Virus record (IMG/VR): IMGVR_UViG_3300034117_001582 | Location: 124,001 to 188,000 of that record | Reading direction: 5' to 3' (one strand) | Length of the DNA: 64,000 bases | In this document: piece after piece, positions 1,289 to 48,514 of the stretch | Numbering within the stretch: position 1 is the stretch's first letter | Layout: each line of letters begins with the position of its first letter | Notes under the pieces: model-generated | Told to the model about the DNA's origin: nothing | Databases searched by the model: none | Seen by the model: the letters and a program-made list of their open reading frames with translations, nothing else | Made by a program: the position numbers and the translations under genes

Positions 1289-1582
1289 ATGGCAAATCAA
1301 TCAGACAAGTTAGATTTTTCACAACCTGATAATGCGTTATCACAAATTGCTGAAGAACAAAGAAAAAAACTTTTCCCAAGAAATGACTTTAAACCTACTG
1401 ACCCATATTCGTCTGTTCATCCTGATGCAATTGCAAATGGTGATAAGATTGGTAGAGGAACTGGTGGTGACTTAGATATTTATAACCAACAAGCGGGAAC
1501 ATCAACAGACATTACAGAAAGAAAAGACGATTTAAAAGTTAATAAATTCTCATCTAATAACCCATACTACACGGTAACATGA
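1289..1582 (+). CDS. hypothetical protein
   Basis: 97-aa ORF abutting neighbours. Confidence 0.7.
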   Translation: MANQSDKLDFSQPDNALSQIAEEQRKKLFPRNDFKPTDPYSSVHPDAIANGDKIGRGTGGDLDIYNQQAGTSTDITERKDDLKVNKFSSNNPYYTVT

Positions 1583-2013
1583 AACTAGTTAGGAGTTTAA
1601 GTAAAGTAATTACTGAAGTGGCAGCTTTAGATAATGTTCAAAGTAGCATTAAACAAAAGAATATTATCACGATTAATTATGATGGTGACGAGTACGGTAA
1701 AGGTTATCGTGACGTTGAGCCAGTTTGCTTAGGAATTAGTAAAGCCGGTAATATGGTTTTAAGGGCTTGGGAAAGACAAGGGTCTTCACACTCTAATAAG
1801 GTTGATGGTAACCCAATTCCAGGATGGAGACTTTTTAGATTAGATAAAATATTGACTTATGCTTTACAAGGTGATAGTTTTACAGAAGTTAGACCTAAAT
1901 ATAACCCTAACGGTGATAGGTCAATGGAAAGAGTTATTTTAAATGCCGTATTTGATTACACACCAAATACAGATGACATAGAAAATATCGATAATATAGA
2001 AAATATAACATAA
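1579..2013 (+). CDS. stand-alone WYL-domain protein
   Basis: RDVEPVCLG...LRAW...GWRLFRLDKI matches the WYL pattern R.VEP..L...L.A...R.FRLDRI; no HTH. Confidence 0.75.
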   Translation: MKLVRSLSKVITEVAALDNVQSSIKQKNIITINYDGDEYGKGYRDVEPVCLGISKAGNMVLRAWERQGSSHSNKVDGNPIPGWRLFRLDKILTYALQGDSFTEVRPKYNPNGDRSMERVILNAVFDYTPNTDDIENIDNIENIT

Positions 2014-2014
2014 C

Positions 2015-2635
2015 ATGGGAGCAGCAGAGGACTTAATGCAAAGATTGGCAGTATCCAAAAAAATAATGGAGAAAACAGAAGGAATACAAAGGGGGGCAAT
2101 AGATTCAAGACATATTAATTCACCTAGAGTTGAGGAGTTTCAACCCGTACAAGGAAATTACAACATACCACAAGAATACTTACAGGAAAATTCAACACCT
2201 AAATCGTCATACGACGCAACAAAACCACTTGAGTCAGATAGAATTAAAAATTCAAAGTTACCTGACGAAATTAAACAATTAATGATTGAAAGACCAATTA
2301 TTCAACCGTCTTCATCATCACCAACAATTTCAAATGACATTATAGAAGGGGCACAAAGACTAATGAATATGAATTCAAGTAATAATACACAACAAAAAAA
2401 ACCTATTACTGAAAATGTAAAAACAAATAACGTTAGTTCTAATATTAATATGAATGAAATGAAATCAATAATTCGTGACGTTGTAAGAGATACGGTAAGA
2501 GATGTGGTTAGAGAAGAATTAAAAGATGCTGGAATGTTAGTGGAATCAACCACAGACTCAAATGAGGTAATACAATTTAAAGTGGGAAAACATCTATTTG
2601 TTGGTAGAGTAACTAAAGTTAAAAAACTAGCATAA
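2015..2635 (+). CDS. hypothetical protein
   Basis: 206-aa ORF in operon, followed by terminator. Confidence 0.7.
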   Translation: MGAAEDLMQRLAVSKKIMEKTEGIQRGAIDSRHINSPRVEEFQPVQGNYNIPQEYLQENSTPKSSYDATKPLESDRIKNSKLPDEIKQLMIERPIIQPSSSSPTISNDIIEGAQRLMNMNSSNNTQQKKPITENVKTNNVSSNINMNEMKSIIRDVVRDTVRDVVREELKDAGMLVESTTDSNEVIQFKVGKHLFVGRVTKVKKLA

Positions 2636-2654
2636 TTAAAATAATATTATATTT

Positions 2655-2684
2655 AAAATCCATCCTAATAGGGGTGGATTTTTT
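2655..2684 (+). terminator. intrinsic terminator
   Basis: AAAATCCATCCT-AAT-AGGGGTGGATTTTTT hairpin with T run. Confidence 0.7.
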
Positions 2685-2722
2685 GTTTTAATATGGTTAT
2701 GATTAATACAAATAGTTTTTAT

Positions 2723-25773: not shown

Positions 25774-26232
25774 ATGAAAAATTTAGACAGATTAATTAAA
25801 CAAGTTTTAAGAGAAGATAAAGAGTCCTCAAGATATATGTTCTTTTCTAATTTAGAACAAATGAAAAGACAATGTGAAATATTATTAGATATGGACCACA
25901 ATATGGTTGAGGATATTTTAGATCATGGTCACGATTGGGCTCAAGACCATATATCAGAAGCCAAAAACAATATGGACCAAGTTTTTGATTTTTTAATGAA
26001 TGAGACGGAAAGAGATGGTATGGAAATGTCTATGAATGTTGATGATAATATGATGATGTCTGAAGGAAGAAAAAAAACAGGAACACCTCTTTGTGCAAGA
26101 GGTAAGGCATCAGCAAAGGCAAAATATGACGTGTACCCAAGTGCTTATAGTAATGGCCATGCTGTCCAAGTATGTAAAGGTAAAATAAAAGGTCTTGATG
26201 GTAAAAGACATTGTTCAGGAGCTTATTGTTAA
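25774..26232 (+). CDS. hypothetical protein (LIKQVLRE leader; C-terminal YPSAY Cys motif)
   Basis: ORF; CARGK..AK.KYDVYPSAY.NG.AV..C. Confidence 0.65.
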   Translation: MKNLDRLIKQVLREDKESSRYMFFSNLEQMKRQCEILLDMDHNMVEDILDHGHDWAQDHISEAKNNMDQVFDFLMNETERDGMEMSMNVDDNMMMSEGRKKTGTPLCARGKASAKAKYDVYPSAYSNGHAVQVCKGKIKGLDGKRHCSGAYC

Positions 26233-26948
26233 AGACTACTTAAAACATTTTTAATCACAAATTCTAAGGACTCATTTTGGGTCCTTTTCTTTTTTGGTTT
26301 GTATGAAGTCATAACAGGTTTTTGTCCTTTACCTGTTTGAGTATCCTTTTTTTCTGCTTTTCTTTTTTGTGCACACGCAGCCTTTTTAGCAGAATCAGAC
26401 ATTTTACCAGCAACTCCAGCAGCTCTACATTTAGGGTATGATTTACTATCAGCATCTGGTCGTCCACAAGGGGGATGTTTACCGTCAACTTTACTACATA
26501 TATTAACCCAAGGACCTTTTGGTTGAGAGGACCCTTTAGGTTTTTTCTTTGTACCAAACCACACCGCCAAATCTTCAGTTAAAATATTATCTAATTCAAC
26601 CCACTCTTTAATTGGTACTATTTTGGTTTTTTTACCCGGGTATCGATTGATTGGGTTACCGTCACCATCACTTAAAGTTGCGTTAGGGTGATTTTTAATA
26701 TAATTATATATTTTATCGGCAACTCTTTCTTCTTTACCTATTTGTTTTTTATTTCTTTCCATTTTACCATCGTAAGAATCATACGCTAAATCAGGACTTT
26801 TGTATTTAGATACGTCAACATTGAACGGTGCTAATACATTAGGTTTGAAATACCTTTCACCCGGTAAAAGTGGTGCAACATAACTACCCCTACTACCACT
26901 TGTGGATGTTGCCTCCTTTAAAATATTTTTAATAGTCCTTTCAATCAT
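26229..26948 (-). CDS. hypothetical protein (IKNILKE leader; WF..WV..CGR..YPKC motif)
   Basis: start MIERTIK at 26948, immediately downstream of TATTTATA (26952-26959, minus strand). Confidence 0.7.
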   Translation of the reverse strand: MIERTIKNILKEATSTSGSRGSYVAPLLPGERYFKPNVLAPFNVDVSKYKSPDLAYDSYDGKMERNKKQIGKEERVADKIYNYIKNHPNATLSDGDGNPINRYPGKKTKIVPIKEWVELDNILTEDLAVWFGTKKKPKGSSQPKGPWVNICSKVDGKHPPCGRPDADSKSYPKCRAAGVAGKMSDSAKKAACAQKRKAEKKDTQTGKGQKPVMTSYKPKKKRTQNESLEFVIKNVLSSL

Positions 26949-28870: not shown

Positions 28871-30421
28871 TTACATTTTTGACATCAAATCTCTCATTCT
28901 CATGAATTGAGGATTTTCGTACGTTTTACTTTCGATTAAATTTGAAGCGGAACCGTTAGATGGTGCTTTAGATACTTGTCTCTGAATAGATTCAGTTACA
29001 ATTTCATTAGACCCCTTACTTCCGTCCAATTCATTTTTAATTGTTTTGTAAAGTGATTTAGATTCTTTAATAGATTCTGCGTTATCGAATCTTCTAAGAA
29101 TATTTATTTTTTCTTGTTTTGTTGTTGAGTGTTCTGTGAACAATCTTGTTGAGTACGCCAAGTTTGAATTAAATACTGCCACTTCATTTAATTTGTTTCT
29201 AAAGAAATCTAAAGCTTTTTTGTATTCTTCATTTTTCTCTCTTAACAAATTCATTTCTTTGGAGACTCCTTCGTTAGTTGGTCTAACTTTCATTTTAGGT
29301 AATCCTCTTCCTGGATAATTTCTACTTCCGTTTCCTAATGTTCTTGAAGCTTCTGTAGTTTCACCTGGCATTTCGTCATATGTAGACATATCGTCTTCCA
29401 TATAATCACCTTCCTGCGTTTCATCATCAAACCCTTCGTAGAATTCTTCATCATCCTCATACATTGCTGTTTCAGTATACATTTCATCTTCGTATTCGTC
29501 TTCGTACATTTCAGATTCAGTAACTCCGTGTTTGATTTTACCAAAAGAAAATTTAGGACCTCTACCTGTTTTTTCAGATTTAGAACCACCTTTCATGTTG
29601 TCTTTAAATCCTTTGTTGTTAACAGATGATTTTTTAAATGCTGACTTCATGCTTCCAAAACCAATTCCTACCGGCTTCATTGATTCTTGAACTTCAAGTT
29701 CGTAAACAACTTCATCCTCGTCTTCGTCTTCATACATTTCATACATTTCGTCATCCTCTTCATACATTTCGTCATCCTCTTCATACATTTCGTCATCCTC
29801 TTCGTACATTTCGTCATCCTCTTCGTACATTTCAGAATTCTTTTCATCCTCTTCAAAGACTAATTCATAGATAACACTCTCGTTTGCTGTGTCCATTGGC
29901 ATCGCTTCTATATTATTTGATTCTCCACCTAAACTAATCATGTAGTCGTTGTTTGTGTTGGTATCGGTTAAATGAATATTATCACCATCTTTTTTAATAA
30001 TGATTCCATCTTCATCACCCATAGCCTTCCAAACCTTTAATACTTCTTCAGGAGATGATCCTGTCATGTCTAATGGTGGCATTTCGTCTTCGTTATCTGC
30101 AGGTCCTTCAGTTCCCATAGCGGAGAAATCAATTTCTTCTCCATCTACATCAACCTCAGCATCTACTTCTGTTTCCTCTGTACCGTCTTCTGTGTCTTCA
30201 ACGTCAATGTCACCCTCAGGTGCCATTTCGTCTCCTTGTTCTGGTTGTTCGTACAAAGATTTTTTTCTTGGGCCGTTTAAGGACTCCCTTACTAATTCAC
30301 TGATTTCTTGCTTCATGGTTGAAGCAAGTATTCCTTTTGCGTTTTCACTGATAGCTTCTTCAATCGACTTCATTTGTAATAAAGCCTCTTCTACTATCGA
30401 ATTGTTTTTGTTTAAACTCAT
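28871..30421 (-). CDS. prohead scaffold/core protein
   Basis: very acidic with coiled-coil C-terminus; lies between protease and MCP. Confidence 0.75.
   Translation of the reverse strand: MSLNKNNSIVEEALLQMKSIEEAISENAKGILASTMKQEISELVRESLNGPRKKSLYEQPEQGDEMAPEGDIDVEDTEDGTEETEVDAEVDVDGEEIDFSAMGTEGPADNEDEMPPLDMTGSSPEEVLKVWKAMGDEDGIIIKKDGDNIHLTDTNTNNDYMISLGGESNNIEAMPMDTANESVIYELVFEEDEKNSEMYEEDDEMYEEDDEMYEEDDEMYEEDDEMYEMYEDEDEDEVVYELEVQESMKPVGIGFGSMKSAFKKSSVNNKGFKDNMKGGSKSEKTGRGPKFSFGKIKHGVTESEMYEDEYEDEMYTETAMYEDDEEFYEGFDDETQEGDYMEDDMSTYDEMPGETTEASRTLGNGSRNYPGRGLPKMKVRPTNEGVSKEMNLLREKNEEYKKALDFFRNKLNEVAVFNSNLAYSTRLFTEHSTTKQEKINILRRFDNAESIKESKSLYKTIKNELDGSKGSNEIVTESIQRQVSKAPSNGSASNLIESKTYENPQFMRMRDLMSKM
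29737..29833 (-). repeat. 21-bp tandem repeat encoding EMYEEDD (x4+)
   Basis: TACATTTCGTCATCCTCTTC(A/G) repeated. Confidence 0.9.
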
Positions 30422-30798: not shown

Positions 30799-31509
30799 TT
30801 ATTTACCTAAATAATCGGATAATCTTCTCATTAAGTCAACAGATTTATCCATACCTGAACCTAAAACTTCAATATTATTATTTTCTTCTAATTTTTCTTC
30901 ATACGTTGGTCTATCTTCTTTATTCAAATAAAGATAAGCTCCAGGTGTTGATGGTGATGACACTAAGTCAAAACAAATTAATTCAAAATCCCCCTGTACT
31001 TCATTTTGTTCTCCTTGTTTAACCAAAGAACCAACACCACGAGAAGAAACCCCCATTGTGACACCTTGTCTCATAAGGTTTGCTGCAACATCACCCTTAG
31101 ACGTTACAATCCCTCTTTCGTGGAAACCTGGACTTGTTAGTAATTTGACTTTACCCATTAGAACATTACCTTCCCACCACATGTCCGTGATAAGGTGTGC
31201 TACTCGATCTAAATCAATCAAGGAAGATTCAGGGTGATTTAATTCTGATATAGACATACCACGTTTAATAACTTCTTGGTATTTTTCAGCTTCTCTTTTT
31301 AATATTTTTTCAGGGTAAACTCTACCATTTCTATTTGGAACTCCATACTTCTGTAAGGTTGCATAAAATACAAACGGTTTAGAGTGTTCTAATTGTCCAT
31401 AAGATTCTTTAATAACATCTGAATTTCTTACTTCATTTGGGTTGATGATTCCAGCATCCCACTCAACTAATATTCCTTTACCAGTATCATTTGGTCCTAA
31501 TATTCTCAT
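30799..31509 (-). CDS. prohead protease (T4 gp21-like)
   Basis: NRNGRVYP, ELNHP, GVSSRGVGS, DLVSSPSTPGA. Confidence 0.92.
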   Translation of the reverse strand: MRILGPNDTGKGILVEWDAGIINPNEVRNSDVIKESYGQLEHSKPFVFYATLQKYGVPNRNGRVYPEKILKREAEKYQEVIKRGMSISELNHPESSLIDLDRVAHLITDMWWEGNVLMGKVKLLTSPGFHERGIVTSKGDVAANLMRQGVTMGVSSRGVGSLVKQGEQNEVQGDFELICFDLVSSPSTPGAYLYLNKEDRPTYEEKLEENNNIEVLGSGMDKSVDLMRRLSDYLGK

Positions 31510-33327: not shown

Positions 33328-35139
33328 CTAACTCAGTAAATCCTTCAACTTGTCGTTGATTTCTGTTAATGAGTTTCTTCCTTTCGCTAAATCCATATAA
33401 TCACTACCCCCAAATAAATGGTCTTCTAATAGCATATTTAAATCATTTTTATTAAACCCTTCAGGGGTTACTCCACCGCCAGGAGGGGCGTCAGGGGGAG
33501 GTGCTTCAGCTCCACCACCCATATCAGGCATTCCACCCATGTCACCACCAGCACCACCAGCATCAGCTCCAGCTTCACCCGCAGGCTCACTTTCTTTTTT
33601 ACCATATAGTTTATCTATATTATCAAATAGACCTGTTTTAGTGATAACTTCAGCAGTTTTACCTAATTCTGCAGACACCGCTCTCTCAACTCTTTGTTGT
33701 TGTAAATCCAATCTGATTTCTTCATCTGAGAACCCTAAGATATGTTTCTTAGCCCAAGATGCAGATACAGGTGCTACCGTGTTTGGAATTTCAGCAACCG
33801 CATCTTTATATAATGTTATCTTTTCTTTCCATAATTCAATACCCAATAAGTCGGATTGTTTTGATGGGTTATGTAATCCTAACGTAAAGTTTGTTAATTC
33901 ATCCTCAAACCCTAATAGAAAAAGGTGAATGATTGCTATTTTATTTAATTCGGCAATCATACACTTTTGAATTCTGTTGATTGTTCTTGCAAAACGAATA
34001 TCTAATAATGATAAGTTTTTACCATCACCAACAGCCTCTTCAAATCCTAAATATGCTTTAGGAATTCTTAATGCCGTAACTAATTTCTTTTGAATATACT
34101 CAATATCCGCAATCTCCGCCAAGTTTGTTCCACCAGGTAACGTTTCAATTGGGTTGGTTGCTGCTGCATCCCTAACAGGGATAAAATAATCTTGATCTAC
34201 CGCCAATTGGTTATATCTCATATCAACATTACCTGTTTGGGGGTCTGAAATTTGGTCTCTTTTAAATTTACTTGCAACTCTTTGTACGTATGGGTCGACA
34301 TCTTTATCGTCCATGTTTCCAACAAATACTTTAAACACTCTTCTTTCAGGTGCTCTTGATACACGATAAATTAACATCGCATCTTCTGATAATAAAAGTT
34401 GTTTCCAAATACGACGTGATTTTTCTAACATAGAGGTACCATATGGAAGTTTTCTGTCGTCACCTAAAATTCTAAAGTGAGCAACCTCCCATGTGTTAAA
34501 TTCCATATTCTTTTCTTTCCAAGTAAATTTCAAAGCATCATTCTCCATTTCTTGTGAATACTTGTCAGGTTGGAATCTCATACCCTTTTCCAATCTTTCT
34601 ATTTGAATGTTAGGTAATTGTTGACAACCAACGATTCCTTTTTCTGGATCCAATTTTAAATAAACAAAGTTATCACCAAACTTACATGTGTTTCTTGTCC
34701 ACATTGGTAGGTTTGTGCTAATATCTAATTTATTATTAAACAAATCGGCCAATACTGATTTTATTCTTTTTGACTCTGAATAAATTTGTAATATATGTCC
34801 GTCTTTATCTGGTGTTGTAGATTCTTCACCGTAGATATCTAACGCCGCTGAAATTTCAGGAGTATATTCCATACTTTCGTAGTCATAATATGAGGCCAAC
34901 CTTGTTGGTTCATAATAAACCGCTTGTTGGTATAAATTGCCCTCAACCTTTTGCCATTGTTTACCAATGTACATTGTTTGCTGTGATTGTAGTTTTTCCC
35001 TTTCAAACTCAGCCTTATCTGTTGTTTTTAATAGTTCTTTTTTGTCGAACTTAAAGACAGGTGATTGTTGGTCCAAAGTGGCATTAGGTCCAAAAACCTT
35101 ACCTAACCTTTGCCATACCGTCATTTTATCTTGTGCCAT
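33328..35139 (-). CDS. portal protein (T4 gp20-like)
   Basis: PEISAALD, EDAMLIYRVSRAPERRVF, DYFIP, IETLPGG.NL. Confidence 0.93.
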   Translation of the reverse strand: MAQDKMTVWQRLGKVFGPNATLDQQSPVFKFDKKELLKTTDKAEFEREKLQSQQTMYIGKQWQKVEGNLYQQAVYYEPTRLASYYDYESMEYTPEISAALDIYGEESTTPDKDGHILQIYSESKRIKSVLADLFNNKLDISTNLPMWTRNTCKFGDNFVYLKLDPEKGIVGCQQLPNIQIERLEKGMRFQPDKYSQEMENDALKFTWKEKNMEFNTWEVAHFRILGDDRKLPYGTSMLEKSRRIWKQLLLSEDAMLIYRVSRAPERRVFKVFVGNMDDKDVDPYVQRVASKFKRDQISDPQTGNVDMRYNQLAVDQDYFIPVRDAAATNPIETLPGGTNLAEIADIEYIQKKLVTALRIPKAYLGFEEAVGDGKNLSLLDIRFARTINRIQKCMIAELNKIAIIHLFLLGFEDELTNFTLGLHNPSKQSDLLGIELWKEKITLYKDAVAEIPNTVAPVSASWAKKHILGFSDEEIRLDLQQQRVERAVSAELGKTAEVITKTGLFDNIDKLYGKKESEPAGEAGADAGGAGGDMGGMPDMGGGAEAPPPDAPPGGGVTPEGFNKNDLNMLLEDHLFGGSDYMDLAKGRNSLTEINDKLKDLLS

Positions 35140-35179
35140 AATCTTTTTTTACTTAAATAATAGTGTTAGTTGTAGTAAA

Positions 35180-36958
35180 TTAAACTCTTCCTCCACCGAA
35201 TAACCATAAATACTTTTCATAATCGCTTTTGGATGCTTCTTGTCTACCATAATTCATGTTATTATAGGTGTTGGCGGGTAATCCAGGATTGAAATTTTGA
35301 GAACTATCTTTAAATGTATTTTTTTCGGTAGTCCAAGATTCCAACATCGCCTTTGTTTGTTCTGTTGCCTTTTCTAATTGTGCAAAAGAAGTTTCACCAA
35401 CAAACACAGCCATAGCAAATGCCATGATTAAGTCATCGTGTTGTCCTTTTTGGTGGTCGGGTCTACCATTTACATAAACAAACGTATTCAGTTCGTTAAA
35501 TAGTCTTTGTGACCTTAACGCAAAATCAAATCTTAATGCCTCTTCAAACGCTTGAATTATTAAAATACGTTTTGAATTAAAGTTAATCCCCGGTATTTTG
35601 TCTTGCGATTTTGGATCCCATTTCCATTTATCCGCAGGGTTAACACCATCTATGTATAGATTTTTATATCCTAATTCTTGTAATTTTCTTGAGGTGGATA
35701 CTCCCATACCACCAGTAATATCAGTAACAATAAATGAGTTATACATTGTCGCCCATTTAAACGCAATTTCCGCCAATACATCCGGTGGGACTTTTCCTAT
35801 ATATTCTAATACTTGTTCTCTAGCATCAAAATCAATAATAGATATGGTACTAAAATCTTCACTATCCCCTCTTGAAACGTCAACACCCATTATATATCGA
35901 TGTCCTTCTACTGGTTCTTTCCATTGCCAAATCGATCCACCCATAAATTTGTTTTCAGGCTCCTTAATATGGTTTTCTTTAATTTTTTTCATGGTTTCGG
36001 AAGGAATAACACTATCCCCCGAACCTAAAAAGTTACATTCAAGTTCTTGTGAAATTTTTCTTTTATCGAACTTTAATTTTTTAGCCATTGACTCAAACCA
36101 AGAACTATAAGGTTTATACCCCTCGTTTTCAACTTTTAATTTAATCTCTTTAAAATCCCTGTCACCTACTTTAATGTCTGAATAATCTAATATGATTTCA
36201 CTATCATTATAATCGCCTCTATTTAACATGTAATGAACAATATCATTACATTTAATAAGTTTTAAATCTTTAGAATAACGTGGGTCACGAAACCAATACA
36301 TTTCAGTAATCCTAAAGTCATTCATACCTTTAATGGCCTGACTAAATATTGAATAGTAGATTGGGTCAAACCCGTTTGGAGTTGAAATAACAATTACCTT
36401 ACCACCTGTAGATAGAGACGCCATACAAGCAGACCAAAAGTCTTCATCGGCGTTAATGTATGCTGCCTCATCAAATATTAATATTGTTGGTGTATAACCA
36501 CGCAAAGCATCCTTTGATGTTGCAACTGCCTTAACCTCACATCCATTTGTTAATTTAAAATGTCTTTGTGAGTTCTTTTCGGTAGAAAAGGTAACACCTA
36601 ACCAAGATGGCCATTGGTCAACAAACGCTCTAACCTTATTTCCCATTTCTTGGGCGGTGTCCATTTTGTTTGCAATAATTAGAATTTTTTCTGGTTTTGA
36701 TTTTTTAGCAAACACTAATCTTTTTGATGCCCAAGCAGACGTTACGGTAGATACTCCAGCCTGACGATACTTTAATGCGATATTTTCCTCACAAGTATCG
36801 TAATCCTTAACCAACGTAACTTGGTCATTAAATAATTCTAATGGTACGTATTTAGATTGTGTGTTATCGTAAGTTTGTAGATAGGTTTTAAGTGCGTACG
36901 GAGTATCGTTTATACACTTAGCATACTCTAATAATATTTGTTCTTTTGATAAAGACAT
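35180..36958 (-). CDS. terminase large subunit (gp17-like)
   Basis: KYRQAGVST, LIFDEAA, ISTPNG, QELEC.F, GVDVSRG, HDDLIMA. Confidence 0.93.
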   Translation of the reverse strand: MSLSKEQILLEYAKCINDTPYALKTYLQTYDNTQSKYVPLELFNDQVTLVKDYDTCEENIALKYRQAGVSTVTSAWASKRLVFAKKSKPEKILIIANKMDTAQEMGNKVRAFVDQWPSWLGVTFSTEKNSQRHFKLTNGCEVKAVATSKDALRGYTPTILIFDEAAYINADEDFWSACMASLSTGGKVIVISTPNGFDPIYYSIFSQAIKGMNDFRITEMYWFRDPRYSKDLKLIKCNDIVHYMLNRGDYNDSEIILDYSDIKVGDRDFKEIKLKVENEGYKPYSSWFESMAKKLKFDKRKISQELECNFLGSGDSVIPSETMKKIKENHIKEPENKFMGGSIWQWKEPVEGHRYIMGVDVSRGDSEDFSTISIIDFDAREQVLEYIGKVPPDVLAEIAFKWATMYNSFIVTDITGGMGVSTSRKLQELGYKNLYIDGVNPADKWKWDPKSQDKIPGINFNSKRILIIQAFEEALRFDFALRSQRLFNELNTFVYVNGRPDHQKGQHDDLIMAFAMAVFVGETSFAQLEKATEQTKAMLESWTTEKNTFKDSSQNFNPGLPANTYNNMNYGRQEASKSDYEKYLWLFGGGRV

Positions 36959-36961
36959 TCA

Positions 36962-37633
36962 TTATCCTTTTCTTTTATTCAACGACTTTAATAATTCACC
37001 TTTCGTCGTGTGTGCAGGTAAATGGTTTTGAATAAGTAACATAATACTTTCTTCTATTTTTTTAACATCGTCTTTCTTTTCCGTTTTTTTAGGTAATCCT
37101 TTGTGTTTTGTTGATGCAAAATCTTTTAAATCTTTTTTAGACATTTCTTTTGACATGTCTTGAACTTTTTTAGAAACCTTAGATTTTGGTGTATCACCCC
37201 TTTTAACTGAAAGGGCTAAGCCCATAATTTTTTGTTGTTGTTTAGAAACTGCCTTTTCATTTACCTCTCCTTCATCCATACCATCAGGTCCTTGTTTTTG
37301 GATTGGGTCTTCATCATCTTCACCTTTAGTCACATCAGACACATCCTCTTCTTCAGATTCTTTAAATTCATTTTCTGTTTGTGTAATAACGGTTTTACCA
37401 CCTTCATTTGATACGGTAGCATTCCCAACAGGCATTTTAGCACCAGAAGGTAATTCAGTAACTTTTGACGTTACGGTTTTTTCAATTGGTTTTGGTTGCT
37501 CTTCAATCTCAACTTTAGATTTTTTTACTTTTTCATATAAAACTCCAATTTGTTTTGAAGTTAATTTTTCAATCGTAGTAATCGAAAACCCTTCATTTAA
37601 AAGTCTCGCTAATTTAGGATTCATATGTTTCAT
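36962..37633 (-). CDS. hypothetical protein with DUF3008-like motif
   Basis: AVSKQQQKIMG.A...KRG...MSKKDLKDFASTKHKGLP. Confidence 0.6.
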   Translation of the reverse strand: MKHMNPKLARLLNEGFSITTIEKLTSKQIGVLYEKVKKSKVEIEEQPKPIEKTVTSKVTELPSGAKMPVGNATVSNEGGKTVITQTENEFKESEEEDVSDVTKGEDDEDPIQKQGPDGMDEGEVNEKAVSKQQQKIMGLALSVKRGDTPKSKVSKKVQDMSKEMSKKDLKDFASTKHKGLPKKTEKKDDVKKIEESIMLLIQNHLPAHTTKGELLKSLNKRKG

Positions 37634-43184: not shown

Positions 43185-44219
43185 ATGAATATAGATAAAT
43201 TTAAGGAACTTCTTTCAGTGCCGTCAAAGACATATCAAGAAGAAGATATGGTTGAGCACATCTGCAACGAGTTAGACTCGATTGAGGGTGTTATGTATTA
43301 TCGAGACGAGATGATGAATGTCTACGCAACTAAAGGTGTGTTAGAGGAAGGTGAATACTACCCTATGTTCATTGCACATACAGATACCGTACACACAAAG
43401 ATTGATAAAATTGTTGTTAAAGAAGAAAAACTTAAACGACCAAATACCTTTGGAAAAACTTTTGATGATACCTTAGTTGATGTTTTAAAGGCATATGATG
43501 AAGAAGGGAACCCAACAGGTATTGGTGGTGACGATAAATGTGGGATTTTTATTTGTTTAGAATTACTTAAACAATTAGACAAAGTAAAAGTTGGTTTGTT
43601 TGTGTCTGAAGAAACGGGTTGTCACGGATCATCAAAATGTGATGAGAGTTTTTTAACAGATGTTGGTTATATTACCCAGTATGACGCCCCTGGTAATCAC
43701 CTAATTTCCGAGATTTGCTCGGGAGTTCGTTTGTTTGAAAGAGATAGTGAATTCTTTGAAAAAAGTATTTCAGTAATCGAAGCAGCATTTGGAAATGAAA
43801 TGTTAGTTCAATCACACCCATATACTGATGTATCACAATTAAAGAAAAAGATTGACGTTTCTTGCATCAACATGTCTTGTGGTTACTACAACATGCACAC
43901 AAAAGAAGAATTCATTTCAATTGATGATGTTGAACGTGCAATTGAGGCAGGAAAAAATATGGTTTTTATCTTGGGATTAAATAAACACCAATACGAATAC
44001 AAACCAATTGTTTATACTAATAAAACAATTATGAATTCTTTAGTGGAGGAAGATTTTGATGAGGATATTATCCATCAGTTAGAAACTATCGATGTTGAGG
44101 AAAATAAAGATGGTATCACCATTATTGATCCGTTTGATGGGAATGCTATGTTTATCAATGATGATGATTTGGTTTACTTATATGATATCATTAAAGAAAG
44201 ATTACTTAAAAAATATTAA
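43185..44219 (+). CDS. M20/M28-type zinc peptidase/hydrolase
   Basis: AHTDTVH, GGDDKCG, SEETGC, YD, NMHT..E. Confidence 0.8.
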   Translation: MNIDKFKELLSVPSKTYQEEDMVEHICNELDSIEGVMYYRDEMMNVYATKGVLEEGEYYPMFIAHTDTVHTKIDKIVVKEEKLKRPNTFGKTFDDTLVDVLKAYDEEGNPTGIGGDDKCGIFICLELLKQLDKVKVGLFVSEETGCHGSSKCDESFLTDVGYITQYDAPGNHLISEICSGVRLFERDSEFFEKSISVIEAAFGNEMLVQSHPYTDVSQLKKKIDVSCINMSCGYYNMHTKEEFISIDDVERAIEAGKNMVFILGLNKHQYEYKPIVYTNKTIMNSLVEEDFDEDIIHQLETIDVEENKDGITIIDPFDGNAMFINDDDLVYLYDIIKERLLKKY

Positions 44220-45364
44220 TCCGTTCTATAATCCATTGGGTCAAATAGACTCTCGTTGTATACCATATTTAGAATATCATCAATATACGATTCACCATAT
44301 TTTACGTTGTACGTTTTTGAGTCCCTAAGTGCATATTTGACTTTAAGCGTTTCTTTATCAACGGATTTAATCAATAATGTGACGTTACTATTTGGGACTT
44401 TAACGTATTTATCAAAACCAACCGTTGTGTTAATCTTATCAATTACTGAAAAATACTTTTCTAATGTTCCTTCATTATAGTCCTCAAGTACCCTATCTTT
44501 AAAACTTTCTAAATCGTTATCTACATTGTGGTCAAACGATCCATGAAATGCTTCATCGTCCCAAACATTATATTGTATTTCATAATATTCAGGTAAGTGT
44601 GATATCCGTTCTTTTGATATTGCCAAAAATAATAAATCAAGAAGACTATCACCTTCAGTACCAAAACGTGGATATAACATAATGGCATCTCCCCAATGTA
44701 ATTTATATTTCCAAAAACAATGTCTTTCAGAATAATTTTCAATACCAACAGGAGACAAACAATTACAATATGCGTCTTCAATGTATTTTTCAATACCACC
44801 CTCAACCGCAGCCACTTCAGCATCTACATACGACATTGTTATATCATCAGATATTCTAGTATCTACTTGGTCTAAAAATGAGCCTACCCTATCCACACCG
44901 TCACCACCAAACACCTGTAATTTACCATCCGGGCGCTTATTAAAAGCAGTTAAAAGTCCTGGTTGAACTATTTTTGCAACATCATAAATAATTTGTAAAT
45001 GATCCGATGTTAATGCTTCAACAATAACACCCTCTCTCCAATCATCGTAGGATCTATCATCAAAATCCCAAGTCCAACTTCTTCTATACATAGAATCATA
45101 ATATCCGGCCTCGTAATAAGAATCACTACCTTCTTCACCATACTCTTCAGGAAAAAAGAATCTCAAATATTCTTCTAACCCATCAAACGTAAACATTAAA
45201 CCGTCTTGTTCTACAGTAATAACGTCACTAAAATCATTACCTTCAGAATTAAAAAACTCTACGTCGTAAGGACTGATTTTTTTTTTATTAAGTGCAAGAA
45301 TTTTTTGAAAGTCATTTAACTCTTCTTCTTCCTCTTGTTCAAAAATCCTTAAAATTTTTTTCAT
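44216..45364 (-). CDS. acidic hypothetical protein
   Basis: start MKKILRIFEQ at 45364, next to TATTTATA (45370-45377); the longer ORF would overlap the tmRNA. Confidence 0.7.
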   Translation of the reverse strand: MKKILRIFEQEEEEELNDFQKILALNKKKISPYDVEFFNSEGNDFSDVITVEQDGLMFTFDGLEEYLRFFFPEEYGEEGSDSYYEAGYYDSMYRRSWTWDFDDRSYDDWREGVIVEALTSDHLQIIYDVAKIVQPGLLTAFNKRPDGKLQVFGGDGVDRVGSFLDQVDTRISDDITMSYVDAEVAAVEGGIEKYIEDAYCNCLSPVGIENYSERHCFWKYKLHWGDAIMLYPRFGTEGDSLLDLLFLAISKERISHLPEYYEIQYNVWDDEAFHGSFDHNVDNDLESFKDRVLEDYNEGTLEKYFSVIDKINTTVGFDKYVKVPNSNVTLLIKSVDKETLKVKYALRDSKTYNVKYGESYIDDILNMVYNESLFDPMDYRTD

Positions 45365-45429
45365 ATATTTATAAATATATTGTTTAATAGAAAGAATTAT
45401 CTTATCTTTACAATAGTTCTTTGATATAT

Positions 45430-45849: not shown

Positions 45850-45852
45850 TTT

Positions 45853-45880
45853 AAACCTCATCTTAGGATGGGGTTTTTTT
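45853..45880 (+). terminator. terminator after tmRNA
   Basis: AAACCTCATC-TTAG-GATGGGGTTTTTTT. Confidence 0.8.
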
Positions 45881-45931
45881 ATGCACTATAATTATATTTT
45901 AGTGTTGTGTGAATATTATATTTTAGTGCAC

Positions 45932-45965
45932 AAAAAAACCCACCAAAAGGTAGGTTTTGTTTTTT
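45932..45965 (-). terminator. terminator for minus-strand genes
   Basis: AAAAAAACCCACC-AAAA-GGTAGGTTTT. Confidence 0.65.
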
Positions 45966-46812
45966 AAAGATTTCTTGTATTTTTTCGTATCGACTCTTGA
46001 ATCAATTTATCTAATTTGTGATTATTATATTCTTCAATCTTTAATGACTTTAAAACCGCTTCACCACCAGCACCAACAGCCTTTTCAACTGTGCTTGACA
46101 TCATTTTAACAACGGCAGGAGCTAAAAACTTATAAGATGCTGATAAGAATTTTTTAAAGTTTGAACCAACATTATCAAACTTTGATTTTTCATCCGGAGT
46201 CACCTTTGGGCCATAAAGTTTATGACAATATCTAAAAACTTTATTTTCATCTTTAGACATGACCCTTGCAATATCCTTTTGTGCTTTAAGGTCCTTATCT
46301 TTCATTTGGGATTGGTAACCCTTAAGTCTTACCTCAAAACTTTTCCATATTTCACCACAATTTTGTTTAATTTTTTCTGTTAGGCCTTCAGGTGTCGGTG
46401 TGGTGGTTGTAGTTCCGGTCGGAGGTGTCGCACCAGTCGGAGTTGTAGTTCCGGTTGGTGGTGTAGTTCCGGTTGGTGGTGTAGTTCCTGTTGGTGTTGG
46501 TGTAGTTCCTGTTGGTGTTGGTGTGGTTCCTGTTGGTGTTGGTTGACCTTCTGCCGTTGCAGGAGCTGCAGTCGATTTGGTAAATAATTTATTTATTGCT
46601 TCTATACCCTTTGGATTTGTTTGTGTTTTCCAATTATTGGTACCTTTAGTTGCGTACTCAACTTTATCTCCGGTTTTTCTATATTGGTAAGAGTCTCCAT
46701 TACCACCTTGTACAACTTCTTGCTCTACTAAATACAACCTTTTAGTTGCATTTTCATGCAAATTAATAATTCTATTTTTTTCCTCTTGGGATAATTCAAA
46801 TAAATTTTTCAT
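45964..46812 (-). CDS. putative head-internal protein with PTGTT linker
   Basis: leader ELSQEEKNRIINLHE...LVEQ; Pro/Thr/Gly repeats at ~46390-46545. Confidence 0.6.
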   Translation of the reverse strand: MKNLFELSQEEKNRIINLHENATKRLYLVEQEVVQGGNGDSYQYRKTGDKVEYATKGTNNWKTQTNPKGIEAINKLFTKSTAAPATAEGQPTPTGTTPTPTGTTPTPTGTTPPTGTTPPTGTTTPTGATPPTGTTTTTPTPEGLTEKIKQNCGEIWKSFEVRLKGYQSQMKDKDLKAQKDIARVMSKDENKVFRYCHKLYGPKVTPDEKSKFDNVGSNFKKFLSASYKFLAPAVVKMMSSTVEKAVGAGGEAVLKSLKIEEYNNHKLDKLIQESIRKNTRNL

Positions 46813-46819
46813 GCGTTTT

Positions 46820-47974
46820 TTAATAATAAATACTTTTATATTTTAATTTTTTCTTTGTTGTGTAAAAATAGTTTTCATTTGTTGTTTGCCCTGTGGTCGT
46901 AACTTGTGTTTCAGTTTGCCCTGTGGTCGTAACTTGTGTTTCAGATTGACTAATTGCCTCAAGTTCTGTTTGTGCTTGTTGAATCGCATCTTTACCTTTT
47001 GACATATCTGCTTTTAATTTTTTCTTTGCCCAAGAATCCCCTTGAGAAATTAATTTGTTAACGTTTGCAAATTTTTCAATCGCTTTTGGTAAAAACTTTT
47101 TTACGATATCGTATATTTTTGGCATTTTTTTAATTGATTCTACTGCCTGTGAAATTCCAGACGACATAATGTTTTTAAGCGGTTGTAAAAATTTCGTAAG
47201 ATAACCATTAGATAATAACGCAAAAATATCAATCAATAACAACATCCAACTACCCTTTCCACTTATGGCCATATAAGCATCATATATGGTTAAAGCTCCC
47301 CACGCTACCGTAGTGGCAATTGCTCCTATACCTGTAAAACTTAAAAATTTTTGTACAAGGGCACCCATAGGACTATTTAATGCGTTTCTTAAACCTGCAA
47401 AAAACTTATCAAACCCCGTTTTTTTTATTTTTTCGGCAACTTGGTCATCAGATAAAGTTTGTTGTGTTACTGACTGTCCACCATTAAATGGTATTTTTTT
47501 TTCAATCTCTTTAGATAGTTCACCTTCAGCACCGTACCATTGTTCAGTATTTTTTAATCTCCACGCATATTTTTTTTCTCCACTTTCAAAATATAATTTA
47601 AAGTCGTATTGTGGATTTGTTTTTATATCAATTTGTTCTGTTTTTTGGGTTTCTGATTGTTCTAAAATAAAATTTTTAAAATTTTTAAATTGTGAGTCGG
47701 TAAATATTTTGATATTTTCTTCATTTTCTAAAATGAGGTTATTTAAGTTTTTTTTACTATACTCCAAAATCTTTTTCTTTGGGTATCCAATAGATTTTAA
47801 ATTATCCTCTATTAGTTTTTGAACGTATTTTTTTTGTTCGTATTTACCTTTTATAAAACAACCAAAAGTTGCATCACAAATTCTTTTTTGAAATTCTAAC
47901 GACTCATTTATTGATGAAGTATTTAATTTTTTTGATAACTCTTTTAATTGGTTGTCCGTTAAAATAATTTTCAT
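46820..47974 (-). CDS. putative head-internal/ejection protein with hydrophobic hairpin
   Basis: leader IILTDNQLKE..INES; hydrophobic stretch TGIGAIATTVAWGAL...MLLLIDIFALL; exact 30-bp duplication at 46884-46943. Confidence 0.6.
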   Translation of the reverse strand: MKIILTDNQLKELSKKLNTSSINESLEFQKRICDATFGCFIKGKYEQKKYVQKLIEDNLKSIGYPKKKILEYSKKNLNNLILENEENIKIFTDSQFKNFKNFILEQSETQKTEQIDIKTNPQYDFKLYFESGEKKYAWRLKNTEQWYGAEGELSKEIEKKIPFNGGQSVTQQTLSDDQVAEKIKKTGFDKFFAGLRNALNSPMGALVQKFLSFTGIGAIATTVAWGALTIYDAYMAISGKGSWMLLLIDIFALLSNGYLTKFLQPLKNIMSSGISQAVESIKKMPKIYDIVKKFLPKAIEKFANVNKLISQGDSWAKKKLKADMSKGKDAIQQAQTELEAISQSETQVTTTGQTETQVTTTGQTTNENYFYTTKKKLKYKSIYY

Positions 47975-48002
47975 TAATTTTTTTTTTATTTATATAAATA
48001 TC

Positions 48003-48186
48003 CGTATATTTGTAATTATACAAACATTCCTTCCATATTCAGATTTTAGAAAATCTTGATAACAAACGATTAGGTAAAAAACTTGTTGATGATTATAAGA
48101 TATTTTGGAAGGTATGACAAGCCTTGACCTAAACGTGTAGTCCTTATCTGACAGGCTGGACAGGATCGGAGTTCAAATCTCCACCA
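48003..48186 (+). pseudogene. chimeric remnant: 5' end of the glycosylase gene fused to the 3' end of tmRNA
   Basis: 48003-48100 resembles 48582-48690 (ATG changed to ATA, ~11-nt deletion); 48100-48186 resembles 45755-45849 with 34 nt identical. Confidence 0.9.
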
Positions 48187-48194
48187 TTTAAAAA

Positions 48195-48225
48195 CAAAAA
48201 CCCCTCTTTTGGAGGGGTTTGTTTT
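48195..48225. terminator. intrinsic terminator, likely bidirectional
   Basis: AAAACCCCTC-TTTTG-GAGGGGTTT. Confidence 0.75.
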
Positions 48226-48226
48226 A

Positions 48227-48514
48227 TTACCATTTAGGGCATTGCAATAATTTGGATTTAAATATAGGGCTTTTTGCACTATGTTTTTGTAACATTCTTT
48301 TTAATTTACGTAAATTTCTACCTTTAAATTTACGGATGTTATCACCAAGTTTGTCGATTAATCTTTTTAAACCGTTTGCATCATTTTCATCCACATCATC
48401 AAGTTCATCGTCTACTTCCATTTCAATGTCCCCTGAAATTTCTTCTTGTTCTCTAATCACTCGTCTAACGATGCGAGATAAATCAGACTCTGTTAATCTT
48501 ACAATTCTGTTCAT
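48227..48514 (-). CDS. small protein with VRLTESDL.RIV.RVI.EQ leader
   Basis: 95 aa; TATTTATA at 48552-48559. Confidence 0.7.
   Translation of the reverse strand: MNRIVRLTESDLSRIVRRVIREQEEISGDIEMEVDDELDDVDENDANGLKRLIDKLGDNIRKFKGRNLRKLKRMLQKHSAKSPIFKSKLLQCPKW

What the first reader, a model, noticed from the sequence alone, without database searches (positions are those of the whole stretch)
1579..48514. Shared amphipathic leader ending in (I/L/V)xE marks a set of likely head-packaged, protease-matured proteins
Seen: unrelated ORFs start with similar basic-amphipathic helices ending in Glu: LSKVITE (1579), LIKQVLRE (25774), IKNILKE (26948), LARLLNE (37633), ILRIFE (45364), RIINLHE..LVE (46812), LTDNQLKE..INE (47974), LTESDL.RIV.RVIRE (48514). 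Known: T4 gp21 cleaves after (L/I)xE and removes capsid-targeting leaders from internal proteins. Inference: a general packaging signal that delivers diverse cargo into the capsid and then the host cell.
Basis: inference. Interest (0 to 1): 0.7.

Follow-up and report, generated by a model that had tools for sequence, protein, structure and literature searches.

The report
Shared leader peptides in jumbo phage
A 292-kb phage of Bacteroidetes puts a few short, strongly conserved N-terminal peptides, each holding a T4-protease-type (L/I)xE site, in front of about 60 otherwise unrelated proteins; this is most likely a tag that loads cargo into the capsid, but that has not been tested.

Summary
The bare (I/L/V)xE motif is worthless as a marker: 49% of this genome's ORFs have it in their first 30 residues. 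The whole 291,867-bp genome nevertheless holds about 61 genes in six families of conserved N-terminal leaders. These sit on 56 unrelated protein bodies and make up 17% of the proteome.

- Three are strong members (48514, 47974, 46812).
- Three are weak or degenerate (25774, 26948, 45364).
- Two look like chance (1579, 37633).

Evidence bearing on the capsid-tag reading:
- Selection acts on the peptide, not the DNA.
- Conservation ends at a near-invariant Glu with I/L at P3.
- The phage encodes a T4 gp21-type protease.
- Leader genes share a phage-specific promoter motif with structural genes, not the host-type promoter.
- The same test recovers the known capsid-targeting sequences in T4.
- A cultured relative has leader-family genes inside its head module.

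The class-A leader marks about 7,850 protein clusters in metagenomes and matches no Pfam family.

Packaging and cleavage remain inferred. A similar leader on orphan genes in Prevotella chromosomes, and the leaders' extreme conservation, leave room for a capsid-independent docking role.

The parts
48227..48514 (-). 95-aa protein with a class A leader (residues 1-22, nt 48449-48514: MNRIVRLTESDLSRIVRRVIRE), followed by an acidic tract
   Evidence: Class A profile E 2.5e-15. Near-identical leaders occur in metagenomic homologues. TATTTAT lies at 48553-48559.
46820..47974 (-). 384-aa protein with a class B leader (MKIILTDNQLKEL..., nt about 47930-47974)
   Evidence: Class B profile E 4e-10. TATTTAT lies at 47994-48000. 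No Pfam, PHROG or Atlas assignment for the body.
45964..46812 (-). 282-aa protein with a class D leader (MKNLFELSQEEKNRIINLHE, nt 46753-46812)
   Evidence: Class D profile E 4e-13. TATTTAT lies at 46826-46832. The body is related only to g15680.
44216..45364 (-). 382-aa protein. MKKILRIFE followed by an acidic run looks like the first nine residues of class A. Degenerate candidate.
   Evidence: No profile hit. TATTTAT lies at 45371-45377, 13 nt before the ATG. The tmRNA upstream rules out the longer TTG-started ORF.
26229..26948 (-). 239-aa protein with a lysine-rich C-terminal part, directly downstream of the capsid gene. MIERTIKNILKE|A is a marginal class C2 leader and the best internal-protein-like candidate in the head module.
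   Evidence: C2 profile E 0.04. A hairpin-plus-T-run lies just upstream, then TATTTAT at 26953-26959, 11 nt before the ATG. Sequence.
25774..26232 (+). 152-aa protein. MKNLDRLIKQVLRE is a weak class A/C2-like leader.
   Evidence: Class A E 0.007, C2 E 0.06. The orthologue in relative G001 (MKNLDSIIKKVLKED) scores as C2 at E<1e-3. No promoter motif of its own.
36962..37633 (-). 223-aa DUF3008 protein directly upstream of TerL. LARLLNE is not a member of any leader family.
   Evidence: Best profile E 0.32. Pfam DUF3008. No TATTTAT.
1579..2013 (+). 144-aa WYL-domain protein. LSKVITE is a chance match.
   Evidence: Pfam WYL. No profile support. No promoter motif, and it overlaps the preceding gene.
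30799..31509 (-). Prohead protease of T4 gp21 type (Peptidase_S77), the presumed processing enzyme
   Evidence: Pfam PF03420 4.8e-25 and phrog_207. 33% identity to T4 gp21, with ELNHP and GVSSRG aligned to T4 His85 and Ser140. TATTTAT lies at 31524-31530.
27022..28830 (-). Major capsid protein (gp23 family). The presumed N-terminal propeptide is residues 1-60 (nt 28651-28830), ending L-I-N-E|A-A-S.
   Evidence: Pfam Gp23 2.9e-73. Aligned with T4 gp23 from residue 62 (T4 residue 80). T4's own site FLTE65|A was read from the T4 record.
28871..30421 (-). 516-aa very acidic repeat protein in the scaffold (gp22) position, with several [IL]xE sites at its N-terminus (SIVEE|A, SIEE|A, ISE|N)
   Evidence: Sequence. 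No family match. TATTTAT lies at 30456-30462. Its role is inferred from position.
33328..36958 (-). Portal (gp20 type, 33328-35139) and large terminase (35180-36958), which complete the T4-like head module
   Evidence: Pfam Portal_T4 6.4e-74 and Terminase_6N.

Best explanation
The leaders are capsid-targeting propeptides of the T4 kind, expanded to an unusual scale. A short N-terminal strand-plus-amphipathic-helix tag of about 10-22 residues, in six sequence classes, would bind a component of the assembling prohead core. This would bring the attached protein inside the shell. The gp21-type protease would then cut after the conserved Glu of the (L/I)xE sites (E9 and E22 in class A, E7 and E15 in class B), releasing the mature cargo. 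The cargo would be packed with the DNA and probably enter the host at infection.

Shown: the families exist, they are strictly N-terminal or module-initial, selection acts on the peptide, the bodies are unrelated, the promoter class is shared with structural genes, and the protease is present.

Inferred: binding to the prohead, cleavage, packaging and injection.
For: 1. Leader families are real. There are 292 N-terminal similarity pairs against 6 in the control. About 61 genes fall in six classes. 70 of 76 profile matches start within the first 12 residues.
2. The bodies are unrelated: 56 BLASTP clusters, and 5 of 327 same-class pairs share body similarity. One homologous body carries class C1 in this phage and class B in relative G001.
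3. Selection is on the peptide. 40% of identical-residue codon pairs use different codons. Nucleotide identity by codon position is pos2 0.80 > pos1 0.69 > pos3 0.56, falling to about 0.3 right after the leader.
4. [LI]xE lies in the first 16 residues of 58 of 61 leader proteins against 50 of 281 others, p 1.6e-31.
5. In class A, L7-T8-E9 is 99-100% conserved and I20-x-E22 is 90-98% conserved, and conservation collapses after E22.
6. In a GH24-lysozyme family of 377 homologues the leader ends L13-x-E15|[A/G/S], with E15 invariant.
7. The protease is S77 type with catalytic motifs conserved. The capsid protein has LINE60|A.
8. T4's own cleaved N-termini look alike: gp24 MAKINELLRE|S, gp22 MLKEQLIAE|A, gp23 FLTE|A (PMC9026906).
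9. Positive control: the same test on T4 recovers the IPII, IPIII and IPI capsid-targeting cluster and the Alt pair.
10. Among genes with 30 nt or more of upstream spacer, 30 of 32 leader genes have TATTTAT against 47 of 126 others, p 3e-9. The motif also precedes the scaffold, protease, sheath, tube and baseplate wedge genes. The Bacteroidetes-type TAnnTTTG motif precedes 28 of 126 non-leader genes and 1 of 32 leader genes.
11. In the cultured Flavobacterium phage immuto, small leader families have members next to the terminase gene, between portal and protease, and just after the protease. The slot between portal and protease is where T4 encodes the core proteins gp67 and gp68. The top 12 hits of its I2 profile in this genome are all leader genes.
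12. In an AlphaFold2 model the leader is not packed on the lysozyme body (pLDDT below 50 for residues 1-14).
Against: - There are no proteomic, N-terminal or expression-timing data.
- About 20 of the 22 class-A positions are conserved at 60% or more among the best 150 profile matches in a search that found about 7,850 protein clusters. That is far more than a protease site or the 10-residue T4 tag needs, and it suggests a specific binding partner that need not be the capsid.
- 61 cargo proteins (17% of coding capacity, up to 1,031 aa) would exceed any known head cargo set. SPN3US has nine protease substrates (PMC10052503).
- Two annotated bodies are lysozyme or chitinase-like enzymes with cell-wall-binding domains and could be ordinary endolysins.
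- The small genes in this phage's own head module between portal and protease lack class A-E leaders.
- TATTTAT also lies upstream of the DNA polymerase (-68) and helicase (-35), so the promoter class may not be strictly late.
- A class-A-like leader heads single orphan genes in Prevotella and Segatella chromosomes, next to a Y-family-polymerase-like ORF, a large hydrolase-like ORF or an IS1595 element, with no head genes in the roughly 8 kb examined.
- The related Microcystis phage Mel-JY01 has a similar head module, an annotated prohead protease and bS21, but almost no leader families.
- [LI]xE is expected fairly often in any I/L/E/K-rich amphipathic helix.
Confidence: 0.45

Rival explanations
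1. The leaders are docking or oligomerisation helices for a common partner that is not the capsid. Candidates are a host protein conserved in Bacteroidota, the phage's own ClpA/B-type unfoldase or chaperones, or each other. On this reading many different activities are recruited to one site and no cleavage is required.
For: - Both faces of the helix are conserved, including polar residues R6, T8, E9, S10, D11, R14 and R18.
- Copies occur inside proteins at the start of a second or third module.
- A near-identical leader occurs on single orphan genes in Prevotella and Segatella chromosomes without head genes nearby.
- The phage encodes a two-ring AAA+ Clp-type ATPase and an M42/M20 peptidase next to a leader-gene cluster.
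- Mel-JY01 has a similar head module and an annotated prohead protease but almost no leader families.
Against: - This does not explain why all six classes keep (L/I)xE in the first 16 residues, or why the lysozyme family keeps L-x-E|[AGS].
- It does not explain the promoter class shared with virion genes.
- It does not explain the head-module location of leader-family genes in phage immuto.
- No partner has been identified.
Confidence: 0.25
2. The leader genes are fast-diverging paralogues from repeated duplication. Only the N-terminal element is still recognisable, and it has no common targeting role.
For: Leader genes lie in tandem same-strand arrays at genome positions 190-275 kb. A few neighbours still share body similarity, for example g229687/g230146 and g237225/g240787.
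Against: - 322 of 327 same-class pairs have no body similarity, and lengths range from 68 to 1,031 aa.
- Bodies include unrelated known folds: GH24+LysM, GH19+PG_binding and CarboxypepD_reg+Big_1.
- Known endolysins match the lysozyme body only from residue about 66, without the leader.
- One homologous body carries different leader classes in two phages.
- The leader heads thousands of distinct clusters.
Confidence: 0.1
3. The conservation is at nucleic-acid level. On this reading a promoter plus 5' coding cassette is kept for recombination, or for translation initiation on SD-less Bacteroidetes ribosomes carrying the phage's own bS21 protein.
For: The promoter motif and leader travel together, often preceded by a G-run followed by a T-run that looks like a terminator. 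The phage encodes bS21 (window 32088-32282), which others have proposed favours late phage mRNAs (PMC9723584). A-rich first codons (MKK, MKI) are common.
Against: - Codon position 2 is more conserved than 1, and 1 more than 3. 40% of identical residues use different codons.
- Internal in-frame copies exist within proteins.
- The 30 nt upstream apart from TATTTAT are not conserved (0.36-0.42 identity).
Confidence: 0.05
4. Chance: K/I/L/E-rich N-termini in an AT-rich genome happen to look alike.
For: This is true for the bare motif: 49% of ORFs have it. It probably explains 1579 and 37633, and perhaps 45364.
Against: - 292 similar pairs against 6 in the control.
- Profile E-values down to 1e-17.
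- About 7,850 database clusters, with the match at residues 1-28 in most of the 150 best listed.
Confidence: 0.02

Closest known systems
Capsid targeting sequence (CTS) of phage T4 internal proteins IPI, IPII, IPIII and Alt, removed by gp21 (Mullaney and Black 1996; reviewed in PMC9026906)
   Same: - A short N-terminal tag shared by otherwise unrelated proteins.
- It ends in (L/I)xE.
- The genome has a gp21-type protease and a gp20/gp23 head.
- The genes are promoter-leader-variable-body cassettes.
- The same N-terminal clustering test recovers the T4 CTS group.
   Different: - No sequence similarity to MKTYQEFIAE (best leader-profile E 0.03-0.5 on T4 N-termini).
- The leaders are up to 22 residues and far more conserved.
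- There are six classes and about 61 genes, against 4-6 in T4.
- Some proteins have internal copies.
- Packaging and cleavage are untested here.
Short N-terminal propeptides of T4 head proteins gp24, gp22, gp21, gp67 and gp68
   Same: An amphipathic N-terminus of 6-10 residues ending in [LI]xE. Weak leader-profile hits fall on gp24 and gp22 (class C1, E 0.18 and 0.5). In phage immuto, leader-family genes lie next to the terminase gene, between portal and protease (the gp67/68-like slot) and just after the protease.
   Different: Those are structural core and shell proteins encoded in the head module. Most leader genes here lie far from the head module and have enzyme-like or unknown bodies.
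Propeptides of head and ejection proteins in giant phages phiKZ, 201phi2-1 and SPN3US (PMC10052503, PMC5694885)
   Same: Jumbo phages with a gp21-like protease that cuts after Glu. They have many internal or ejected head proteins, redundant sites within propeptides, and some 20-24-residue propeptides.
   Different: The motif there is A/S/G-x-E. SPN3US has only 9 substrates (201phi2-1 has 19), mostly with propeptides of 111-254 residues. No conserved leader shared by dozens of unrelated proteins is mentioned in the passages of those papers that I read.
Cargo-loading peptides of encapsulins (from general knowledge, not tested here)
   Same: Short conserved terminal peptides that direct diverse cargo into an HK97-fold shell.
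   Different: They are usually C-terminal, are not cleaved, and belong to cellular nanocompartments rather than virions.

Membership tests
T4-type capsid-targeting / protease-removed propeptide system | The genome encodes a gp21-family (S77) prohead protease with catalytic His and Ser | tested here: met
   PF03420 4.8e-25. ELNHP and GVSSRG align to T4 His85 and Ser140. The residue roles come from the literature.
T4-type capsid-targeting / protease-removed propeptide system | The tag sits at the extreme N-terminus of otherwise unrelated proteins | tested here: met
   70 of 76 profile matches start within the first 12 residues. 56 body clusters among 61 proteins.
T4-type capsid-targeting / protease-removed propeptide system | The tag ends in the protease's (L/I)-x-E site | tested here: met
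   58 of 61 leader proteins against 50 of 281 others within 16 residues. E22 is 98% and I20 is 90% conserved in class A. E15 is invariant and L13 at least 90% conserved in the lysozyme family. The real specificity of this protease is unknown.
T4-type capsid-targeting / protease-removed propeptide system | Sequence homology to the T4 CTS (MKTYQEFIAE) | tested here: not met
   No leader profile matches T4 IP N-termini (best E values 0.03-0.5, on other proteins). This is analogy, not demonstrable homology.
T4-type capsid-targeting / protease-removed propeptide system | The proteins are present in virions with the N-terminal tag removed | not testable with these tools
   No cultured member with a virion proteome was found.
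T4-type capsid-targeting / protease-removed propeptide system | The tag alone is sufficient to carry a foreign protein into the head | not testable with these tools
   Needs an experiment. The complex prediction of protease plus leader gave no answer.
T4-type capsid-targeting / protease-removed propeptide system | Expressed together with head genes (late) | tested here: inconclusive
   The TATTTAT motif is shared with structural genes and is distinct from the host-type TAnnTTTG motif. It also lies before DNA polymerase and helicase. RNA contigs were too sparse to help.
Sec / lipoprotein signal peptides | A hydrophobic core of 10-15 residues after a basic N-terminus | tested here: not met
   The leaders are charged and amphipathic. 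Sequences that look like typical Sec or lipoprotein signals (MKKLLLTLLL...FSQ) form separate clusters in the same test.
Any curated protein family or solved structure | A significant match of the leader to a Pfam, PHROG or PDB entry | tested here: not met
   No Pfam or PHROG hit covers the leaders. The PDB profile search gave only short chance matches. No paper contains the motif strings.

The most novel reading that the evidence does not exclude
Bacteroidetes huge phages of the bS21 clade use a family of modular peptide tags to load dozens of different, rapidly exchanged effector proteins into the capsid for co-injection with the DNA. The class A tag alone marks about 7,850 protein clusters in public data. 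This would be by far the largest virion-delivered protein arsenal known. The same tag on orphan genes in Prevotella chromosomes could then mean either that hosts capture such cargo genes or that hosts smuggle their own proteins into phage heads.
Probability: 0.3. Interest if true: 0.85.

Novelty: new variant of a known kind. Interest (0 to 1): 0.72.

Why it matters
If the leaders are capsid tags, roughly one gene in six of these abundant freshwater phages would encode a protein that travels inside the virion. The leader profile would then predict injected effectors, such as anti-defence, takeover and cell-wall enzymes, directly from sequence in thousands of uncultured phages.

It would extend the T4 capsid-targeting principle from a handful of internal proteins to a general, modular cargo system. 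It would also provide short natural tags for loading foreign proteins into phage heads of Bacteroidetes.

If the leaders are not capsid tags, an uncharacterised, very widespread 22-residue motif shared by phages and Prevotella still needs an explanation.

Tried and rejected
- Complex prediction of protease with leader residues 1-45: no answer, score 0.00, and not evidence either way.
- Megablast and tblastn of head genes and leader proteins against cultured phages: no close relative. The only leader-like hit is one uncultured huge phage, LR756508.
- Profile search of the leader against PDB sequences: only short chance matches.
- ESM Atlas look-ups for three window proteins: nothing usable.
- Literature search for the motif strings: no relevant paper.
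- Contig look-ups for two multi-leader proteins: contigs too short for context.
- Metatranscriptome contigs laid on 44000-49200: depth of about 1-7 over leader genes, no 5' ends, no timing information. The only strong signal is the tmRNA.
- PHROG and Pfam scans of many bodies and neighbours: mostly no hit.
- Isoelectric point and cysteine content of the bodies do not differ from other proteins.
- Fewer leader bodies than other genes have a homologue in relative G001 (12 of 61 against 154 of 281). I do not count this as evidence of faster turnover, because G001 is 75% complete and its ends fall in leader-rich regions.
- The idea that TATTTAT is strictly late was weakened by copies upstream of DNA polymerase and helicase.
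- The search for related loci with the leader alignment failed (no usable conserved stretch) and with a whole class A protein found nothing in genomes.
- All ORF sets come from a crude caller of my own (first ATG, 50 aa or more), so the counts are approximate.


Full report
**Setting**

The window is bases 124001-188000 of a 291,867-bp virus record that is about 99% complete, with about 30% G+C. On its minus strand lies a T4-like head module:
- large terminase, 35180-36958
- gp20-type portal, 33328-35139
- Peptidase_S77 (gp21-type) prohead protease, 30799-31509
- a very acidic scaffold-position protein, 28871-30421
- gp23-type major capsid protein, 27022-28830

A ribosomal protein bS21-like gene lies on the opposite strand inside this module (32088-32282). 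The closest cultured phages share only about 35-37% portal identity: Microcystis phage Mel-JY01 and Flavobacterium phage vB_FspM_immuto.

**Checking the observation**

I called 342 ORFs on the whole genome with a simple caller.
- [ILV]xE occurs in the first 30 residues of 49% of them, so the motif as stated does not discriminate.
- Its frequency is 0.043 per position at residues 6-10 against 0.017 overall.
- An all-against-all comparison of the first 28 residues gives 292 pairs at E<0.01 among 98 ORFs. Residues 61-88 of the same proteins give 6 pairs.
- Apart from two clusters that look like ordinary signal peptides, the similarity falls into six leader classes.

| Class | Consensus |
|---|---|
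| A | M(K/A)(K/R)(I/V)(I/V)RLTE(S/R)DLxRIV(K/R)R(V/I)(I/L)xE |
| B | MKIIITESQ(Y/L/F)xxLxE |
| C1 | MNLQENIRRIxxMM |
| C2 | MxxLI(R/K)(H/K)(I/V)LKE |
| D | FxISEEEKxxIxxLHE |
| E | LLEEIxRF(K/R)xLMxL |

About 61 genes match a class profile at E<1e-3. 70 of 76 matches start within the first 12 residues. Most of these genes lie outside the window, at genome positions 10-22 kb and 190-275 kb.

- Strong members: 48514 (class A), 47974 (class B), 46812 (class D).
- Marginal: 25774 and 26948. The orthologue of 25774 in a relative scores as C2.
- Partial: 45364 copies only the first nine residues of class A.
- Unsupported: 1579 (WYL domain) and 37633 (DUF3008).

When the 61 genes are removed, the N-terminal excess of [ILV]xE vanishes.

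**What the leaders are attached to**

After masking the leaders, the 61 proteins (68-1,031 aa, 16.6% of all residues) form 56 BLASTP clusters. Only 5 of 327 same-class pairs share any body similarity. Few bodies can be named:
- a GH24 lysozyme with LysM (class B)
- a PG_binding_1 plus GH19 enzyme (class E)
- a CarboxypepD_reg/Big_1 protein (class D-like)

Known endolysins match the lysozyme only from residue about 66, without the leader. In an AlphaFold2 model built on 47 homologues the first 14 residues have pLDDT below 50, while the enzyme core scores 84-95. One homologous body carries a C1 leader here and a B leader in relative G001. The leaders therefore behave as exchangeable modules.

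**Level of selection**

Within class A, residue identity is 63%, yet 40% of identical residues are encoded by different codons. Nucleotide identity is highest at codon position 2 (0.80), then 1 (0.69), then 3 (0.56). It drops to background (about 0.3) immediately after the leader. The constraint is on the peptide.

**Breadth**

- A 30-column class A profile finds 7,852 representative proteins (50%-identity clusters) at E<=1e-3 among 1.84 billion, and 224 at E<=1e-10. In most of the 150 best listed the match lies at residues 1-28.
- The logo of the best 150 is MKKIIRLTESDLtRIVKRVInE. Information falls from 4.1 bits at E22 to 1.5, 1.1 and 0.8 bits in the next three positions. This set is ranked by the profile itself.
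- Some proteins carry a second or third copy at the start of a further module (P0031, P0032, P0039, P0109).
- No Pfam or PHROG family, solved structure or paper matches the motif.
- A 219-kb relative (protease 86% identical) has 18 leader genes covering all six classes.

**Link to the protease**

- The protease is 33% identical to T4 gp21, with ELNHP and GVSSRG aligned to T4 His85 and Ser140.
- The capsid protein aligns with T4 gp23 from its residue 62 onward, and L-I-N-E60|A-A-S lies just upstream. The T4 site F-L-T-E65|A lies 14 residues before the aligned block.
- T4's own cleaved N-termini, read from the T4 record, have the same style: gp24 MAKINELLRE|S, gp22 MLKEQLIAE|A, gp21 MNEPQLLIE|T (PMC9026906).
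- [LI]xE occurs in the first 16 residues of 58 of 61 leader proteins against 50 of 281 others (p 1.6e-31). With A, G or S following, the counts are 21 of 61 against 9 of 281.
- Class A holds two such sites: L7-T8-E9|S and I20-x-E22.
- In the lysozyme family (377 homologues down to about 46% identity) nearly every member starts MKIIITESQxxxLxE|(A/G/S), with E15 invariant.

**Regulation**

TATTTAT is the most over-represented heptamer in upstream spacers: 96 genes in the sense orientation against 41 antisense.
- Among genes with at least 30 nt of spacer, 30 of 32 leader genes have it against 47 of 126 others (p 3e-9).
- It also precedes the scaffold, protease, tail sheath, tail tube and baseplate wedge genes.
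- In the window it precedes 48514, 47974, 46812, 45364 and 26948.
- The remaining spacers are enriched for TAnnTTTG, often with an upstream TTG. I recognise this from general knowledge as the Bacteroidetes housekeeping promoter. It occurs in 25 of 81 such spacers against 4 of 77 TATTTAT spacers, and before only 1 of 32 leader genes.
- Leader genes therefore belong to a phage-specific promoter class shared with virion genes. Timing is inferred, because DNA polymerase (-68) and helicase (-35) also carry the motif.

**Controls and relatives**

- The same N-terminal test on T4 recovers the known capsid-targeting group: IPII and IPIII (MKTYQEFIAE), IPI, a fourth small ORF, and the Alt pair. The other clusters it finds are full-length homing-endonuclease paralogues.
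- Flavobacterium phage immuto gives 28 pairs against 0 in the control. It has small families I1 (MENFDLKKFLVENKLT), I2 (MKKSQLRQIIKEEL) and a third (MKKQILSEQFRRMQKLAGIITES).
- Four immuto members lie in the head module: two directly upstream of the terminase gene, one between portal and protease (where T4 encodes the core proteins gp67 and gp68), and one directly after the protease.
- The 12 best hits of the I2 profile in this genome are all leader genes (chance about 1e-9).
- Mel-JY01 has a similar head module, an annotated prohead protease and bS21. It shows almost no such families: 16 pairs against 10 in the control.

**A complication**

A degenerate DNA pattern for RLTESDLxRIV finds 37 places in species-representative bacterial genomes, against about 3 expected by my estimate.
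- About 23 are N-terminal M(N)KKLIRLTESDLHRIVKESVxxxLxE on small proteins with unrelated bodies. They occur in Prevotella, other Bacteroidales and Muribaculaceae, including the isolates Segatella bryantii DSM 11371 and Prevotella sp. MA2016.
- There is one copy per genome in those two isolates.
- The neighbours are a Y-family-polymerase-like ORF and a 990-aa hydrolase-like ORF (identified by eye, not scanned) in S. bryantii. In MA2016 they are a LytTR regulator, a cyclophilin and an IS1595 transposase. No head genes lie in the 8 kb examined.
- These may be captured phage genes. Alternatively the motif works without a capsid.

**Conclusion**

The best-supported reading, at about 0.45, is a much expanded and diversified version of the T4 capsid-targeting and propeptide principle. 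The main rival, at about 0.25, is a capsid-independent docking helix. Diverged paralogy, nucleic-acid-level conservation and chance are unlikely for the families. The phenomenon appears undescribed and is widespread, and it can be tested directly in the cultured phage immuto.

Noticed in passing
window 45430-45849 (+): A phage-encoded tmRNA (Rfam RF00023, 95 bits against a threshold of 47). It is by far the most abundant stretch in three lake metatranscriptomes, with contig depth up to about 900, although depth there may include other organisms. ARAGORN did not call it.
   Followed up: partly
window 32088-32282 (+): A 64-aa bS21-like ribosomal protein gene lies on the opposite strand inside the head module (identified by eye). 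This places the genome in the bS21 huge-phage clades of freshwater Bacteroidetes (PMC9723584). Mel-JY01 also has rpsU in its head module.
   Followed up: partly
window 41090-44219 (+): A 681-aa two-ring AAA+ ClpA/B/C-type ATPase (AAA, AAA_lid_9, AAA_2, ClpB_D2-small) is followed by an M42/M20-family peptidase. Both lie next to the leader-gene cluster at 44216-48514. They could form an unfoldase-peptidase pair acting on tagged proteins.
   Followed up: no
whole genome; examples at window 31524-31530 and 30456-30462: There are two promoter-like classes. The phage-specific (A/G)TATTTAT motif lies 11-45 nt before many structural and leader genes, in several cases just after a G-run followed by a T-run that looks like a terminator. 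The Bacteroidetes-type TTG...TAnnTTTG motif lies before 29 other genes, which supports a Bacteroidota host.
   Followed up: partly
L154 6932-7195 (Segatella bryantii DSM 11371); L161 5795-6220 (Prevotella sp. MA2016); about 20 further Bacteroidales loci L131-L166: Orphan small genes start MNKKLIRLTESDLHRIVKESVNRVLxE, a class-A-like leader four residues longer than the phage form. Their bodies are unrelated. They sit in cellular chromosomes, one of them next to an IS1595 transposase. In several, the translated upstream region is also alike (INTYYN-M), which hints at a conserved 5' region.
   Followed up: partly
P0031, P0032, P0033, P0034, P0039, P0109; genome ORFs g246308 (residues 336-349) and g37804 (residues 215-231): These proteins have two or three leader copies, each at the start of a new module. 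They could be polyproteins cut at each leader, or gene fusions.
   Followed up: no
window 57308-64000 (-), continuing to genome position 190067: A 2,919-aa protein is made largely of collagen-like GTS/GTN triplet repeats. G+C reaches 44% against 30% elsewhere, and several overlapping frames are open. It is probably a fibre.
   Followed up: partly
window 2693-19373 (+) and 49958-55411: A long run of + strand ORFs includes a PhoH-like protein (15831-16571) and a weak glycosyltransferase hit (17494-18561). The other ORFs in this run look like glycosyltransferase or sugar-nucleotide enzymes by eye only. Further on lie a heptosyltransferase and a 1,497-aa multi-glycosyltransferase. This fits the cell-surface remodelling proposed for this clade.
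   Followed up: no
window 38015-39409 (-) and 28871-30421 (-): Two head-module proteins have striking internal repeats: PPAPDMGM/PPAPEGEGM in the first and EMYEEDD in the second. Both are very acidic. They are probably scaffold or core components.
   Followed up: no
window 48597-49103 (+) and 49083-49928 (-): A pyrimidine-dimer DNA glycosylase (denV-like) lies here and carries both promoter motifs. Next to it is a GLEYA/PA14 carbohydrate-binding protein.
   Followed up: no
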